From the NCBI GenBank assembly GCA_002269645.1, contig NIVC01003410.1, positions 35,333-99,332 of the forward strand: a DNA stretch of 64,000 bases. Direction: 5' to 3'. The position numbers and the translations under genes were made by a program. The number at the start of each line of letters is the position of its first letter. Position 1 is the stretch's first letter. This DNA is from Macrostomum lignano (taxonomy: Eukaryota). Positions 19,966 to 31,670 of this stretch are shown in pieces. The notes under the pieces were generated by a model. The model ran no database searches, was not told where the DNA came from, and was given only the letters and a program-made list of their open reading frames with translations.

Positions 19966-21231
19966 TCAATATCGAACGCCGTGGATTTTGTCCGCCAGCT
20001 TGAACAGTCCCTTGTTTGCCTCTTTCTTGAAGATTTTGTACGGAGCCTTCAGTACGGCGATCGCGACTCCTGCATGCAAATTTTTGGCATTCACTTGAGT
20101 TTTGAAATTTTACCTTTTACGTCTAACAGATGGCACCAGTGTCTAACAGCTGTGGTGTGTCTAACACCTGTGGTGTGTCTAACAGCTGTGGTGTGTCTAA
20201 CATGCAGCTCTTATGTGTCTAACAGCTGTGGTGTGTCTAACAGCTGTGGTGTGTCTAACATGCAGCTGTGGTGTGTCTAACAGCTGTGGTGTGTCTAACA
20301 GCTGTGGTGTGTCTAACAGCTGTGGTGTGTCTAACAGCTGTGGTGTGTCTAACAGCTGTGGTGTGTCTAACAGCTGTGGTGTGTCTAACAGCTGTGGTGT
20401 GTCTAACACCTGTGGTGTGTCTAACAGCTGTGGTGTGTCTAACATGCAGCTGTGGTGTGTCTAACAGCTGTGGTGTGTCTAACACCTGTGGTGTGTCTAA
20501 CAGCTGTGGTGCGTCTAACATGCAGCTCTTATGTGTCTAACAGCTGTGGTGTGTCTAACAGCTGTGGTGTGTCTAACAGCTGTGGTGTGTCTAACATGCA
20601 GCTGTGGTGTGTCTAACAGCTGTGGTGTGTCTAACAGCTGTGGTGTGTCTAACAGCTGTGGTGTGTCTAACAGCTGTGGTGTGTCTAACAGCTGTGGTGT
20701 GTCTAACATGCAGCTGTGGTGTGTCTAACAGCTGTGGTGTGTCTAACAGCTGTAATGTGTCTAACAGCTGTGGTGTGTCTAACAGCTGTGGTGTGTCTAA
20801 CAGCTGTAATGTGTCTAACAGCTGTGGTGTGTCTAACAGCTGTGGTGTGTCTAACAGCTGTGGTGTGTCTAACAGCTGTGGTGTGTCTAACAGCTGTGGT
20901 GTGTCTAACGGCTGTAATGTGTCTAACAGCTGTGGTGTGTCTAACAGCTTTGGTGTGTCTAACAGCTGTAATGTGTCTAACATGCAGCTGTGGTGTGTCC
21001 AACAGCTGTGTGTCTAACAGATCAGATGTCTCTAACAGCTGACATCAGAGTCTAACACTTGAGATAGCTATCTAACAGCTAGCACTGGAGTCTACTTGCG
21101 TGCAAATCTGTGCAAATAAAATTTTGGCGACATCCAAAAAACTTACTCTTTGGGCATCCGTCAGCCACTGAGGTGCTCATGATGACGAGACTAAGTGCTG
21201 CTATGATGAATAGAAACCGCCACATGCGCAT
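19966..21231 (-). CDS. Secreted cationic peptide A (62 aa; exons 21231-21147, 20069-19966)
   Basis: MRMWRFLFIIAALSLVIMSTSVADG-CPK|RVAIAVLKAPYKIFKKEANKGLFKLADKIHGVRY*. GTAAGT donor, CAG acceptor, phase 1; homologous to B, C and D. Confidence 0.85.
20125..21060. repeat. 19-bp minisatellite (AACAGCTGTGGTGTGTCTA) filling the intron of peptide A
   Basis: Tandem units. Confidence 0.95.
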
Positions 21232-21469
21232 GTCGATAGCGGGTTGAGCTGCTAAACTGCTCAATAGACAGCAGGATGACTTACTTGTTATTAAAATGGC
21301 TTGCGATGGCTATAAAATAGATGCATCAATTGCGCATCATATTTTGTAAGAACGCATTCCCAAGTTCTCAGTAATTCGTTCCTTAAAAGAATAAGTAATC
21401 TAACATATGATTGCTGTATCTCTATGGTCCAACCAGTTAACTTACACTACTCGGTTTTAAAATAACTAA

Positions 21470-21640
21470 CTAACTAACTAACTAACTAACTAACTAACTA
21501 ACTAACTAACTAACTAACTAACTAACTAACTAACTAACTAACTAACTAACTAACTAACTAACTAACTAACTAACTAACTAACTAACTAACTAACTAACTA
21601 ACTAACTAACTAACTAAATAACTAACTAACAAACTAACAA
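21470..21640. repeat. (TAAC)n microsatellite
   Basis: Seen directly. Confidence 0.97.
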
Positions 21641-22105
21641 ATGTTAAATGCGGTTTAATCAGATGATTAGGAACGTTTCAGAAAATTTACTGTAAATGTC
21701 TAACTTTAAATAAATCTCGTTTAAAGTTAAGATGTAAATTCTTGTTTTTAGTTAAAAAATACTTTAAAAAATAGTTACACGTAACTTAAATATTTCCTTT
21801 CTTTTATATTTTTGTTTATTTAATGTTGTTAAAAACGAAATTCCCAAATTGCATTTTAAACAAAATAAAACTTGTAACCACTGTCGACATAGCGTCGTGT
21901 TGTCGTGTTTTAATGAAAAAAACAAAAAAATTTACTTCTACCAGTCATGCAAAAGGTTTCGCATTACCTAACACAGATTATTAATGGTTCACTCGAGTTT
22001 CTTACTACTCCAAGACAAAAATATAAATCTAAAAGTGCTACTTAAAGTAAGCAATAAGAGCACGTAGTCAGAAAATATTTGAATTTAACAAATAAGTGTT
22101 GCAAT

Positions 22106-29270: not shown

Positions 29271-29493
29271 CAATAATTTCAGCCTGTAAGCGGGTACGAG
29301 CGTACGTGGTGCAGCTTCTGTCGCAGCAGACCGTCGCTCGTTGCTCTCTGCCGTCTAATTTTGGCACCCGGAAGCAGAACTAAATGTATTGATTCGTCTC
29401 TAAATAAGTCACGACGCAAACAGCTCTAACATTGTTTTCTACCTACTGTAATTATACTTGTTGTAAGCAATGCTGGAATTTAAAGACACAAAT

Positions 29494-29562
29494 GGGATCG
29501 GGAATCGAACCCTCGATTTTCGAATCGTGAGGTCCGACGCTCTGACCACAAGGCTGCTACAC
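29494..29562 (-). mobile_element. tRNA-like SINE head fragment
   Basis: Minus strand GGTGTAGCAGCCTTGTGGTCAGAGCG...GGGTTCGATTCCCGATCCC has A/B-box spacing and matches the head of the SINE at about 27600-27660. Confidence 0.6.
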
Positions 29563-30057
29563 CCTCAAATAGGCTACAATAAAGTAAGAAAAAGCATAAA
29601 CTTGCTAAAACATAATGCATGTGCATGTATACTTATTAAGCAAGTCAGTGGTAAGCTAAATAATACGTTTTATTTACTGTAAAAATACGAGCGTGAAATG
29701 CAAGCATACATAAAACAATAGTTGTAATATTTTCGAAAAAATAAACTATATTCTTTAGAAACAAGGGTGATAAAAATAAGAAACTTACCATTTACATGCA
29801 TTTTACATCTAAGCTCCAAATCCATCAAATACTGGGTAAGCTGAATTAGAAAATCCTTAAATAAGTAAAACAAATCTGTAAAAGTAAGAAACCCGGAAAA
29901 TTTTTGCCGCATCACGTGACTATCTCGAAATTCACAAGTCGACCCGGCCGCAAAAGTTCAACATCCAGAAGCTGCCTATGAACTCCAAATGATTAGATAG
30001 GTAGAACAAATTTATAAAAGTCAATCACACACGCGACTGCTTCCCAGTTTCTGCTGG

Positions 30058-31670
30058 TCAACCCCATCGATTATTCTTAGCTTTGGCCGCATCTCTAGAC
30101 GCCTTCAGGGCCTCCTCGGCTGCCTTCTTAGCCGCCTCGGCCGCCTCTCTGGCCGCCCGCTCGGACGCCTCTTTGGCCGCTTTCTCGGCCGCCTGGGCCG
30201 CCGCCCGCCTAGACGCATCGGCCGCCATTTTAGCCTCAATTTTGGACACCCGTTTGGCCACTTCATCGGGTTTGTGAATTTTGTCGGAGATTTTGTACAG
30301 CTGCTTGTTGACTTTCTTCTGGCCGAAGTTGAACGCACTCTTGGTGACCTCCTTTGCTATTTCTGCGGTCGATACGGTTGGTTGGTACGCGGAGTATCAA
30401 AATAAAGTGTGACTTTGCTAAAAATTTGGGGTCAGTAACATTAACATGCACAAGTTAGACATTAGCCTTTGTACGCGTGTACATCATGTACTTTAGGCTA
30501 GCTAGGATTTTTGCACGGAGCTGTAATTTAAGTTTGAATAACTTATTAAGTATCTGATCACGCATTAAGAAATGCATATCAGCGAGAAAATACACAGAAC
30601 GACTGTTCAGAAGGAAATGTCATTTGCAGCGGGGACATGTCCCCCCCCCTACAGTAAAAAATAAGGAGGAACATGCCAATGCTTCGTCTCCACACCCCAC
30701 CTTTGTTGACCAATTATTAAAATCAATAATTTTGCTTCAGGTCGACAAAACAGTCCCTGCGGCGCTAAAATGAGGGCCTGCGGCGCTAAAATGGTGTCTG
30801 CAGCGCTAAAATGAGTGCCTGCAGCGCTAAAATGAGTGCCTGCGGCGCTAAAATGAGTGCCTGCGGCGCTAAAATGGTACCCTGAAGTGCTAAAATGAGT
30901 GCCTGTGGCGCTAAAATGGTACCCTGAAGTGCTAAAATGAGTGCCTGTGGCGCTAAAATGGTACCCTGAAGTGCTAAAATGAGTGCCTGTGGCGCTAAAA
31001 TGAGTGCCTGCGGCGCTAAAATGAGTGCCTGCGGCGCTAAAATGAGTGTCTGCGGCGCTAAAATGAGTGCCTGCGGCGCTAAAATGAGTGCCTGCCGCGC
31101 TAAAATGAGTGCCTGAAGTGCTAAAATGAGTGCCTGAAGTGCTAAAATGAGTGCCTGTGGCGCTAAAATGAGTGCCTGTGGCGCTACAATGAGTGCCTGA
31201 AGTGCTAAAATGGTACCCTGAGGCGCTAAAATGGTACCTGCGGCGCTAAAATGAGTGCCTGTGGCGCTAAAATGAGTGCCTGCGGCGCTAAAATGAGTGC
31301 CTGCGGCGCTAAAATGAGTGCCTTAAGTGCTAAAATGAGTGCCTGCGGCGCTAAAATGAGTGCCTGTGGCGCTAAAATGAGTGCCTGCGGCGCTAAAATG
31401 AGTGCCTGCGGCGCTAAAATGAGTGCCTGCGGCGCTAAAATGAGTGCCTTAAGTGCTAAAATGAGAGCCTGTGGCGCTCAATCTGTCCTGCTCCCTACCA
31501 TAAAATCCATGGCGACGTCCCTGGTCATATGTACGTGTATGCTTGTGCAAGACTTACCAACAAATTAATAACTTACTAATGGGGCAACACTCTGCACAGC
31601 GGAGAATCCAAAGCAGCAGACAAACTCCAAAGATAATTTGAGACGTGGCAGGCTTCAAGGCAAAGTTCAT
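30058..31670 (-). CDS. Secreted cationic peptide D (132 aa; exons 31670-31577, 30362-30058)
   Basis: MNFALKPATSQIIFGVCLLLWILRCAEC-CPI|KIAKEVTKSAFNFGQKKVNKQLYKISDKIHKPDEVAKRVSKIEAKMAADASRRAAAQAAEK...KNNRWG*. GTAAGT donor, CCGCAG acceptor, phase 1. Confidence 0.85.
30760..31480. repeat. About 21-bp minisatellite (GCGGCGCTAAAATGAGTGCCT) in the intron of peptide D
   Basis: Tandem units. Confidence 0.95.

What the first reader, a model, noticed from the sequence alone, without database searches (positions are those of the whole stretch)
19966..31670. Hidden tandem cluster of four paralogous secreted cationic amphipathic peptide genes
Seen in sequence: four minus-strand two-exon genes (A 21231-19966, B 23876-22106, C 27787-26687, D 31670-30058). 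Each has a hydrophobic signal-peptide exon, a GTAAG donor in phase 1 just 3-4 codons after a Cys, an intron containing a different minisatellite, and a second exon. A, B and D align without gaps over 33 residues: CPKRVAIAVLKAPYKIFKKEANKGLFKLADKIH / CPISLTKSIVKSSFKGGQRFVNKKLYQLADKIH / CPIKIAKEVTKSAFNFGQKKVNKQLYKISDKIH. C keeps K11, F14 and N22-K23. The ORF track misses them because the signal exons and the conserved module are split across the satellites. I do not recognise the family. Inference: Lys-rich sequences with hydrophobic residues about every 3-4 positions suggest membrane-active helical peptides (antimicrobial, toxin, or gland/seminal secretion). High divergence around a few fixed residues is typical of such families.
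Basis: partly seen in the sequence, partly recalled or inferred. Interest (0 to 1): 0.92.

Follow-up and report, generated by a model that had tools for sequence, protein, structure and literature searches.

The report
Flatworm orphan secreted cationic peptide cluster
Four small two-exon genes lying in tandem in the flatworm Macrostomum lignano encode secreted, lysine-rich, probably helical peptides of a family found nowhere else; three are already in GenBank as unnamed hypothetical proteins, and their function, with antimicrobial-like the leading guess, is untested.

Summary
All four minus-strand two-exon models translate exactly as stated. A, B and D are residue-for-residue identical to GenBank proteins of Macrostomum lignano (PAA51524, PAA51525, PAA51526), whose annotation was built from RNA-seq. 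C is unannotated, but its frame and splice sites are intact in all three assembly copies of the locus, and it matches the A/B/D profile better than any of 2,000 shuffles.

The family is an orphan. It has no Pfam or PDB match, and an exhaustive profile search of 1.84 billion proteins returned only its own members. The peptides have signal peptides, a Cys at the likely cleavage site and net charge +8 to +18. Lys/Arg recur every fourth residue, and the module is predicted helical at low-to-moderate confidence. These properties fit membrane- or polyanion-binding secreted peptides but do not prove it. No expression or activity data could be found.

"Hidden" overstates the case, and satellites fill 40% of the window, not just these introns. 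A fifth annotated gene 25 kb away (57234-56024) has the same architecture but an unrelated mature peptide.

Verdict: a real, uncharacterised, lineage-restricted secreted-peptide family of moderate interest.

The parts
21147..21231 (-). Gene A exon 1: signal peptide plus Cys-Pro-Lys, with a phase-1 GTAAGT donor
   Evidence: translation. The spliced product equals GenBank PAA51524.1 / P0004.
20070..21146 (-). Gene A intron (1077 nt). It contains an 18-mer minisatellite at 20139-21041, leaving only 174 nt of unique sequence.
   Evidence: The same satellite sits at the same place in the two other contig copies.
19966..20069 (-). Gene A exon 2: the conserved Lys-rich module followed by GVRY and the stop codon (62 aa precursor, roughly 37 aa mature peptide, charge +8)
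   Evidence: There are 4 synonymous and 0 non-synonymous differences among the three contig copies. AF2 predicts a helix at residues 28-58, pLDDT 65-73.
23786..23876 (-). Gene B exon 1: signal peptide plus Cys-Pro-Ile, with a phase-1 GTAAGC donor
   Evidence: The product equals GenBank PAA51525.1 / P0002.
22441..23785 (-). Gene B intron (1345 nt) containing a 20-mer minisatellite at 22524-23728
22106..22440 (-). Gene B exon 2: the module plus an 80-aa basic tail with a Pro/Gly linker (141 aa precursor, mature charge +18)
   Evidence: The other two contig copies carry an in-frame 15-nt insertion in the linker (146 aa; P0003, P0006).
27697..27787 (-). Gene C exon 1: signal peptide plus Cys-Cys-Thr-Pro-Ala, with a phase-1 GTAAGC donor. 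Not annotated in GenBank.
   Evidence: The exact sequence is not in the 15-billion-protein collection. The exon and its donor are conserved in all three contig copies.
26848..27696 (-). Gene C intron (849 nt) containing a 23-mer minisatellite at 26963-27327
26687..26847 (-). Gene C exon 2: a divergent module plus an Arg/Lys-rich tail (83 aa precursor, mature charge +15)
   Evidence: Leave-one-out profile score is 13.6 bits against a shuffle maximum of 9.2. The frame is open in all three copies despite 13-16 substitutions, with pN/pS about 0.55.
31577..31670 (-). Gene D exon 1: signal peptide plus Cys-Cys-Pro-Ile, with a phase-1 GTAAGT donor
   Evidence: The product equals GenBank PAA51526.1 / P0001.
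30363..31576 (-). Gene D intron (1214 nt) containing a 21-mer minisatellite at 30752-31478
30058..30362 (-). Gene D exon 2: the module plus a 70-aa Ala/Lys/Glu-rich tail ending in Gly (132 aa precursor, mature charge about +11)
   Evidence: AF2 predicts helix 31-60 (pLDDT 51-58) and one long helix 63-130 (pLDDT 82-95). The nucleotide sequence is identical in all three contig copies.
21295..21301 (-). CCAAT-box-like AGCCAWT motif 70 nt upstream of the gene A ATG. Equivalent sites lie at 23990-23996 (B, -120), 27904-27910 (C, -123) and 31813-31819 (D, -149).
   Evidence: This is weak evidence because the motif was chosen post hoc. It is probably a generic promoter element, since it also lies 57 nt upstream of the AIP-like gene's first ORF (47937-47943).
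56024..57234 (-). Gene E. It has the same architecture but is not a sequence homologue. Exon 1 is 57234-57141 (signal peptide ending Tyr-Cys-Cys-Ala-Arg, phase-1 GTAAGT donor). The intron holds a 45-mer satellite at 56148-57068. Exon 2 is 56118-56024. The product is 62 aa.
   Evidence: Found by a generic scan and modelled. The product is an exact match to GenBank PAA51528.1. There is no detectable homology to the A-D module, and E has no relatives at all.

Best explanation
This is a real, lineage-restricted (orphan) gene family of the free-living flatworm Macrostomum lignano. Four head-to-tail paralogues (D-C-B-A on the minus strand) arose by tandem duplication.

SHOWN. Each gene has a first exon of 28-31 codons encoding a secretory signal peptide that ends at a Cys. 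A phase-1 intron follows. The second exon encodes a conserved module of about 33 residues rich in Lys, followed by a variable tail: none in A, 24 aa in C, and about 70-80 aa in B and D.

INFERRED. Signal peptidase cuts just before a Cys, giving mature N-termini CPK, CPI, CTP and CPI. The module folds as one helix, or two around a Pro/Gly hinge, when it meets an anionic surface. Its Lys/Arg residues, spaced every fourth position and flanked by hydrophobic residues, would then make it a cationic amphipathic binder of membranes or other polyanions. The single N-terminal Cys could give disulfide-linked dimers.

LEADING FUNCTIONAL GUESS. These are externally secreted effector peptides of the host-defence (antimicrobial-like) type, made by epidermal, gland or gut cells. 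The existence and architecture of the family are near certain (about 0.95). The host-defence function is a guess, and the confidence figure given here (0.35) refers to it.
For: GENE REALITY. The models translate cleanly. A, B and D are identical to GenBank proteins from an annotation built on RNA-seq (StringTie/TACO plus a de novo transcriptome, PMC5730564). The whole cluster is present on three contigs with conserved splice sites. A shows 4 synonymous and 0 non-synonymous changes. The only exonic indel is in-frame, whereas the flanking non-coding DNA has 44-74 gap columns.

PARALOGY. Leave-one-out profile scores beat 2,000 of 2,000 shuffles for all four members.

SECRETION. Each has an N-terminal hydrophobic core of 11-13 residues (12-residue Kyte-Doolittle mean 2.4-3.1) and a site obeying the (-3,-1) rule directly before a Cys.

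CATIONIC HELIX. Net charge is +8 to +18. AF2 predicts a helix over the whole module. The lag-4 Lys/Arg autocorrelation is 19 against 8.1 +/- 2.1, with 0 of 5,000 shuffles reaching it.

GENE-FAMILY STYLE. A taxonomically restricted, tandemly duplicated family with a signal exon separate from the mature-peptide exon and high divergence around a few fixed residues is typical of effector-peptide families (established knowledge). No relatives exist outside M. lignano.
Against: There are no expression, localisation or activity data. The gene IDs are absent from every supplement I could search.

Amphipathicity is only modestly above shuffles (P = 0.02-0.09 per peptide). It peaks at 90 rather than 100 degrees per residue, which a single straight alpha-helix would not present as one face. 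The unrelated peptide E reaches a similar moment.

AF2 confidence for the module is low to moderate (pLDDT 51-73) with a 4-5 sequence alignment.

The B and D tails are also cationic and long, unlike the anionic pro-pieces of many AMP precursors.

HDMs show that this physico-chemical profile can go with non-antimicrobial roles (PMC3708846).

No SignalP-grade predictor was available, so the cleavage site is a rule-of-thumb inference.
Confidence: 0.35

Rival explanations
1. Reproductive secretion. The peptides are seminal-fluid, prostate or other genital-gland products transferred at mating. They evolve fast under sexual selection and act on partner tissues or sperm.
For: They are small, secreted, orphan and tandemly duplicated, like many of the 76 prostate-limited Mlig-pro transcripts. 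Of the 65 of those whose ORF could be translated, 38 have signal peptides (PMC5977470). M. lignano reproduction-related genes evolve fast (PMC7336406 and PMC8662610, abstracts).
Against: None of the gene IDs (Mlig027090, Mlig007395, Mlig010865, Mlig011746, any .gN suffix) occurs in the uncut merged table of in situ probes (Brand 2020, file 16) or in the Weber 2018 supplements. Weber screened transcripts that were both tail-limited and socially plastic, so strong prostate genes would probably have been included. A and D are perfectly conserved at the protein level between assembly copies. That comparison spans only about 2-5% divergence, so it says little about long-term rates.
Confidence: 0.15
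2. Structural or secretory-matrix component. The peptides are Lys-rich constituents of mucus, rhabdites, adhesive or cement secretions, or eggshell. They bind anionic glycans or surfaces electrostatically rather than attacking membranes.
For: The high Lys content, strict 4-residue basic periodicity and long Ala/Lys/Glu single-helix tail in D suit polyanion binding or filament and coacervate formation as well as membrane binding. A flatworm has many gland-cell types that make abundant lineage-specific secreted proteins (established knowledge; tissue list).
Against: The genes are not among the in situ-characterised adhesive, cement, antrum or rhabdite transcripts in the merged table. Peptide A is only about 37 residues, which is small for a matrix protein. 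There are no repeats and no modification-prone motifs such as DOPA-type Tyr-rich or Gly-rich blocks.
Confidence: 0.15
3. Signalling peptides. The genes are neuropeptide or hormone precursors processed at basic sites.
For: They have a signal peptide and small size. There are several KK, KR and RR pairs. D ends in Gly and B in Gly-Arg, which are possible amidation signals.
Against: The conserved unit is a 33-residue helical module that itself contains the basic pairs, rather than short peptides flanked by them. C-terminal Gly is not conserved: A ends VRY and C ends YKY. There are no repeated peptide copies. Pfam has no prohormone family match.
Confidence: 0.07
4. Annotation noise. The ORFs are chance or decaying open frames in satellite-rich DNA and have no function.
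For: The three-copy comparison has little power, with only 1-5% divergence. C is unannotated and has pN/pS of about 0.55.
Against: Three models coincide exactly with transcript-derived annotation. The four paralogues conserve signal peptide, Cys, intron phase and module far beyond shuffles. A has 4 synonymous and 0 non-synonymous changes. A blind scan for this exon type returns only these genes plus another annotated gene.
Confidence: 0.03

Closest known systems
Trematode helminth defence molecules (HDMs: FhHDM-1, Sm16/SPO-1)
   Same: Both are flatworm-lineage small secreted proteins whose first exon encodes the signal peptide. Both are predominantly alpha-helical, cationic and amphipathic, and both are lineage-restricted (PMC7373315).
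   Different: HDM genes have four exons and a conserved C-terminal amphipathic helix, and they are reported as exclusive to trematodes. This family has two exons, its conserved helix lies at the N-terminus of the mature peptide, and it occurs in a free-living macrostomorph. No sequence similarity was found in an exhaustive profile search of a library built from about 15 billion public proteins. I did not confirm that HDM sequences are in that library. The relationship is analogy, not membership.
Linear cationic alpha-helical antimicrobial peptides (cecropin, magainin, pleurocidin type)
   Same: Both have a signal peptide followed by a short Lys-rich peptide. Charge (+5 to +8 over the module) and hydrophobic moment (0.46-0.57) are within the range of these peptides. 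There is a Pro/Gly hinge in the middle, as in cecropins. The genes form tandem families with a separate signal exon (the comparison peptides were recalled from memory).
   Different: There is no sequence homology to any of them. This family has an N-terminal Cys, a 4.0-residue rather than 3.6-residue periodicity, and long cationic tails in B and D in place of anionic pro-pieces. Activity is untested.
Taxonomically restricted effector-peptide families of other aquatic invertebrates (for example Hydra arminins and periculins), and single-Cys disulfide-dimer helical AMPs of tunicates (dicynthaurin, halocidin). Both comparisons are from my own knowledge and were not tested here.
   Same: They are orphan, secreted, cationic, clustered or duplicated genes. 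A single Cys could give covalent dimers of helices.
   Different: The sequences are unrelated. Dimerisation here is pure inference from a conserved Cys at the predicted N-terminus.
M. lignano prostate-limited seminal-fluid candidates (Mlig-pro1-76)
   Same: Same species, and many of those candidates are short secreted proteins predicted to be secretory.
   Different: This family's gene IDs are absent from the in situ tables that list those candidates.

Membership tests
Helminth defence molecules (HDM) | Detectable sequence homology to the conserved HDM C-terminal region | tested here: not met
   The profile search of 1.84 billion representative proteins returned only the family's own members plus one chance repeat-protein hit. 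Pfam found nothing. I did not confirm that HDM sequences are in the searched library.
Helminth defence molecules (HDM) | Four exons and three introns, with exon 1 encoding the signal peptide | tested here: not met
   This family has two exons and one phase-1 intron. Only the point 'exon 1 = signal peptide' is shared. The HDM gene structure is taken from PMC7373315.
Helminth defence molecules (HDM) | Restricted to trematodes | tested here: not met
   The organism is Macrostomum lignano, a free-living macrostomorph.
Helminth defence molecules (HDM) | Secreted, cationic, predominantly alpha-helical and amphipathic | tested here: met
   Signal peptide, charge +8 to +18 and predicted helices. This is shared physico-chemistry only.
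Linear cationic alpha-helical AMPs (functional class) | Secretory precursor yielding a short peptide with net positive charge | tested here: met
   The cleavage site is inferred with a simple (-3,-1) rule, not with SignalP.
Linear cationic alpha-helical AMPs (functional class) | Amphipathic helix with a high hydrophobic moment | tested here: inconclusive
   The moment is 0.46-0.57, within the AMP range, but only P = 0.02-0.09 against shuffles. The unrelated peptide E scores 0.45. Periodicity is 4.0 residues, and AF2 pLDDT is 51-73.
Linear cationic alpha-helical AMPs (functional class) | Microbicidal or membrane-permeabilising activity; expression in barrier tissues or induction by infection | not testable with these tools
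   No expression or activity data were found in the literature or supplements.
M. lignano seminal-fluid candidates (Mlig-pro) | Prostate-limited in situ signal, with tail-limited and socially plastic expression | tested here: inconclusive
   The gene IDs are absent from the uncut merged in situ table and from the Weber supplements. That indicates the genes were not screened, rather than screened and found negative. The full differential-expression tables are truncated in the held copies.
Neuropeptide prohormones | Conserved short peptides flanked by dibasic sites, with C-terminal Gly for amidation | tested here: not met
   The conserved unit is a 33-residue module containing the basic pairs. 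C-terminal Gly occurs only in D, and Gly-Arg only in B.
Any curated protein family (Pfam) or solved structure | Significant profile, sequence or fold match | tested here: not met
   Pfam gave nothing above noise. The best PDB sequence E-value was 0.14. Foldseek against PDB gave 0 matches. The UniRef label 'NTR domain-containing protein' on A is unsupported.

The most novel reading that the evidence does not exclude
The cluster could be the first host-defence peptide family described from a free-living macrostomorph flatworm. On this reading the helical peptides have an N-terminal Cys, which could mediate dimerisation or lipidation, and a Lys stripe with 4-residue spacing. The signal-peptide exon ending in Cys-Cys with a phase-1 donor would then be a reusable 'secretory cassette': in M. 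lignano it has been joined to unrelated mature-peptide exons (gene E at 57234-56024), pointing to a wider and so far unrecognised class of two-exon orphan secreted-peptide genes in this genome.
Probability: 0.2. Interest if true: 0.6.

Novelty: new member of a known kind. Interest (0 to 1): 0.4.

Why it matters
M. lignano is a transgenic, RNAi-tractable model for regeneration, stem cells, bioadhesion and sexual selection. I found no paper on antimicrobial or host-defence peptides in Macrostomum in the searched library.

A small, clearly delimited, transcript-backed orphan family of secreted cationic peptides is cheap to test by in situ hybridisation, RNAi and synthetic peptides. It could supply new peptide scaffolds.

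Gene C is a concrete annotation gap. The shared signal-exon architecture with the unrelated gene E hints at how new secreted-peptide genes arise in this highly repetitive, partly duplicated genome.

If the peptides prove to be ordinary gland products, the result is a modest annotation improvement.

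Tried and rejected
1. REMOTE HOMOLOGY. I tried Pfam, a PDB profile search, a word-indexed search of 5.8 billion proteins, an exhaustive HMM search of 1.84 billion representatives and Foldseek against PDB. 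All returned only self-hits. The single outside hit, P0005, is a VLKGPFPLGEPAIAKD-repeat protein matching the KGPFK motif, and I rejected it as chance.

2. SPLICED cDNA CONTIGS. Exact-protein look-ups found only the three genome contigs and no RNA-seq assemblies. Direct junction evidence therefore rests on the published transcript-based annotation.

3. EXPRESSION AND TISSUE FROM THE LITERATURE. The locus tags appear in no main text. They are also absent from the supplements of Weber 2018, Grudniewska 2018, Brand 2020 and Wudarski 2017. The genome-wide differential-expression tables are truncated in the held copies. No M. lignano cell atlas or infection transcriptome was found.

4. SELECTION FROM THE THREE ASSEMBLY COPIES. 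The copies are too similar (1-5%) for a decisive dN/dS.

5. A FIFTH MEMBER AT 58786-58748. This was a weak tblastn hit. I rejected it because it has no start codon or hydrophobic core.

6. HOMOLOGY OF GENE E TO A-D. Rejected: hhalign probability 0.75%, and 0.6 bits with 15% of shuffles scoring as high.

7. A FAMILY-SPECIFIC PROMOTER MOTIF. AGCCAWT lies upstream of all four genes, but I chose it post hoc. An unbiased shared-8-mer test found nothing, and the motif also precedes the AIP-like gene. It is probably a generic CCAAT-like element.

8. 'A SATELLITE IN EVERY INTRON' AS A SPECIAL FEATURE. Downgraded, because arrays cover 40% of the window, including the intergenic spacers.

Full report
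WHAT IS THERE. Each intron carries its own minisatellite, with units of 18, 20, 23 and 21 nt. A tblastn of the four proteins against the whole window finds no further copies.

ORGANISM AND PUBLIC STATUS. A search of 5.8 billion proteins with the four-paralogue alignment returned only four hits, all 'hypothetical proteins' of the free-living flatworm Macrostomum lignano. My models of A, B and D are identical, residue for residue, to PAA51524.1, PAA51525.1 and PAA51526.1. Gene lengths and coordinates place the window on the last 64 kb of contig NIVC01003410.1 of assembly Mlig_3_7. That assembly's GenBank annotation was derived from RNA-seq: genome-guided StringTie/TACO plus a de novo transcriptome, after removal of transcripts overlapping repeat annotations (PMC5730564). 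A, B and D are therefore transcript-backed, and the predicted junctions are the annotated ones. Gene C is not annotated. The accessions of A, B and D are consecutive, and the exact C product is absent from a 15-billion-protein collection. 'Hidden' is thus true only with respect to a naive ORF list, and literally true only for C.

IS C REAL, AND ARE THE FOUR RELATED? In leave-one-out tests, I scored each mature module against a profile of the other three and compared the result with 2,000 shuffles that kept the N-terminal Cys. The scores were 29.9, 46.0, 13.6 and 49.4 bits for A, B, C and D. No shuffle reached the observed value, and the shuffle maximum for C was 9.2. Pairwise identity over the 33-residue module is 13-18 of 33 among A, B and D, and 9-10 of 33 for C.

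THE THREE ASSEMBLY COPIES. [quoted passage not shown] The same satellites sit at the same places in all three. All splice sites are conserved, and all four frames, including C's, are open in all three copies. A has 4 synonymous and 0 non-synonymous differences. B has pN/pS of 0.3-0.6 plus one in-frame 15-nt indel. C has 13-16 substitutions with pN/pS of about 0.55, in a locally more diverged stretch. D is identical, together with its nearby flanks. Non-coding flanks differ by 2-5% with 44-74 gap columns, while exons differ by 1-2% with only the in-frame indel. This supports coding constraint but has low power.

PROTEIN FEATURES. Each precursor begins with a hydrophobic core of 11-13 residues (12-residue Kyte-Doolittle mean 2.4-3.1). 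Each has a site obeying the (-3,-1) rule directly before a Cys: ADG|CPK, GHG|CPI, GDC|CTP and AEC|CPI. That would leave a single Cys at every mature N-terminus. This is an inference, since no SignalP was available. Mature net charges are +8, +18, +15 and about +11. In the aligned module, Lys/Arg are conserved at columns 8, 12, 16, 20, 24, 28 and 32, each beside a conserved hydrophobic column. The lag-4 autocorrelation of basic residues is 19 against 8.1 +/- 2.1 in shuffles (0 of 5,000 reach it), with per-sequence P of 0.009-0.037. This explains why the hydrophobic moment peaks at 90 rather than 100 degrees per residue.

PREDICTED STRUCTURE. AlphaFold2 predicts the module as a helix at residues 31-60 in D (pLDDT 51-58) and 28-58 in A (pLDDT 65-73). 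It predicts D's Ala/Lys/Glu tail as one 68-residue helix (pLDDT 82-95). The alignments had only 4-5 sequences, so these are weak predictions. Pro or Gly residues in the middle of the module (KAPYK, KGPFK, FKGGQ, FNFGQ) suggest a helix-hinge-helix form.

AMPHIPATHICITY. The maximal 18-residue moments (0.46-0.57, HeliQuest scale) and the charges lie within the range I computed for magainin 2, cecropin A, pleurocidin, melittin, dermaseptin S1 and LL-37. However, each module exceeds its own shuffles only at P = 0.02-0.09, and the unrelated peptide E reaches 0.45. The 'membrane-active' reading is therefore compatible with the data, not demonstrated.

NO KNOWN FAMILY. Pfam gave nothing. The best PDB profile E-value was 0.14. 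Foldseek against PDB gave no match. An exhaustive HMMER search with a signal-plus-module profile against 1.84 billion representatives found only P0001, P0002 and P0004, plus a chance match to a repeat protein. The UniRef name 'NTR domain-containing protein' attached to A has no support.

COMPARISON WITH HDMs. The nearest flatworm precedent is the trematode helminth defence molecules. They share 'secreted, cationic, helical, amphipathic, exon 1 = signal peptide'. They differ in having four exons, a conserved C-terminal helix and a trematode-only distribution, and no HDM-like protein surfaced in the exhaustive search. This is analogy, not membership. HDMs also warn that this chemistry need not mean antimicrobial activity (PMC3708846).

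FUNCTION. I could find no expression data. The locus tags occur in no main text and in none of the searchable supplements. One of those supplements is the uncut merged table of in situ probes from the prostate, antrum, adhesive and cement-gland screens (file 16 of PMC7336406). The seminal-fluid screen took transcripts that were both tail-limited and socially plastic, so absence is mild evidence against a strong prostate role.

I rank the explanations as follows. First, externally secreted cationic effector peptides of the host-defence type (about 0.35). Next, reproductive secretion and structural or matrix component (about 0.15 each). Then signalling-peptide precursor (about 0.07), and noise (about 0.03). 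The remainder is left for functions I have not considered.

CONTEXT AND AN EXTRA FINDING. Tandem arrays cover 40% of the window (32 arrays of at least 300 bp), including the A-B, B-C and C-D spacers. Satellite-filled introns are therefore a property of the region.

I ran a blind scan of both strands for 'Met, hydrophobic core, Cys within the last seven residues, GTAAG donor'. It returned exactly the four known first exons plus one more at 57234-57141, also in phase 1. That exon is followed by a satellite-bearing intron and an exon at 56118-56024. The resulting 62-aa product is an exact match to GenBank PAA51528.1, which is present on four contigs. Its mature part is not detectably related to the A-D module, and it has no relatives anywhere. 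The same secretory-exon architecture, 28-31 codons ending in Cys(-Cys)-x-x with a phase-1 donor, is thus used by an unrelated peptide 25 kb away. Whether this reflects common descent with exon-2 turnover or convergence is open.

A CCAAT-like AGCCAWT lies 70-149 nt upstream of each of A-D. I selected it post hoc, it also precedes the neighbouring AIP-like gene, and an unbiased k-mer test was negative.

VERDICT. The gene-family interpretation is right. The functional interpretation is plausible but untested. Novelty is limited to an uncharacterised orphan family with one unannotated member. Interest is moderate.

Noticed in passing
window 56024-57234 (-): A fifth two-exon secreted-peptide gene (E) with the same architecture as A-D: a signal exon ending Y-C-C-A-R, a phase-1 GTAAGT donor, a private 45-mer satellite in the intron and a short second exon. 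Its product is an exact match to GenBank PAA51528.1. The mature peptide (CCARDTLNFLGGYKKVAKGHNPMYSPVDGRLMGYH) is unrelated to the A-D module and has no homologues anywhere.
   Followed up: yes
whole window: Tandem arrays cover 40% of the 64 kb (32 arrays of at least 300 bp). Almost every intron and intergenic spacer has its own private minisatellite or long tetranucleotide array, for example (AGAC)n at 7828-8976 and (ACTA)n at 37427-38328. This is far above the 15% genome-wide figure given in PMC5730564.
   Followed up: partly
window 1193-1685, 11254-11352, 41059-42000: One 28-mer satellite (CAGTTGCTGGGCCAGCCTCCCAGATCCT and its reverse complement) recurs at three separate places, unlike the other arrays, which are locus-private.
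   Followed up: no
window about 3405-13091 (-); L005 14279-21182: A multi-exon peptidase M16 gene (insulinase/nardilysin type; M16, M16_M, M16_C and PqqF-like_C_4 domains) lies directly downstream of gene A on the same strand. Its introns are also full of satellites. M16 enzymes of the nardilysin type cut at basic sites, but the adjacency may be coincidental.
   Followed up: partly
window 45092-47880 (-): An AIP-like gene (N-terminal FKBP-type PPIase_AIP domain plus TPR repeats). An AGCCATT motif lies 57 nt upstream of its first ORF, at 47937-47943.
   Followed up: partly
window 61629-62876 (+): A 415-aa ORF with an amiloride-sensitive sodium channel (ASC, DEG/ENaC) domain, Pfam E = 3e-29.
   Followed up: partly
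window 18190-18825 (-): An RNase H domain ORF between the M16 gene and gene A, probably a retroelement fragment.
   Followed up: no
L001-L007 (contigs NIVC01003410.1, NIVC01000110.1, NIVC01000691.1): The whole cluster exists in three assembly copies differing by 2-5% in non-coding DNA, but gene D and its nearby flanks are identical in all three. Immediately downstream of D, contig 691 diverges sharply (62 of 289 mismatches). This suggests gene conversion or a mosaic history of the copies.
   Followed up: partly
window 54542-55543 (+/-): A 15/45-mer array (TGGTGCTGGCGCCCC) gives long open frames in several phases, for example (APGAK)n preceded by a Met-initiated unique N-terminus. I did not check whether any of these is a real repetitive protein.
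   Followed up: no
protein P0004 (gene A): UniRef names this 62-aa protein 'NTR domain-containing protein'. A Pfam scan at E up to 10 finds no domain at all, so the name looks like an annotation artefact.
   Followed up: yes
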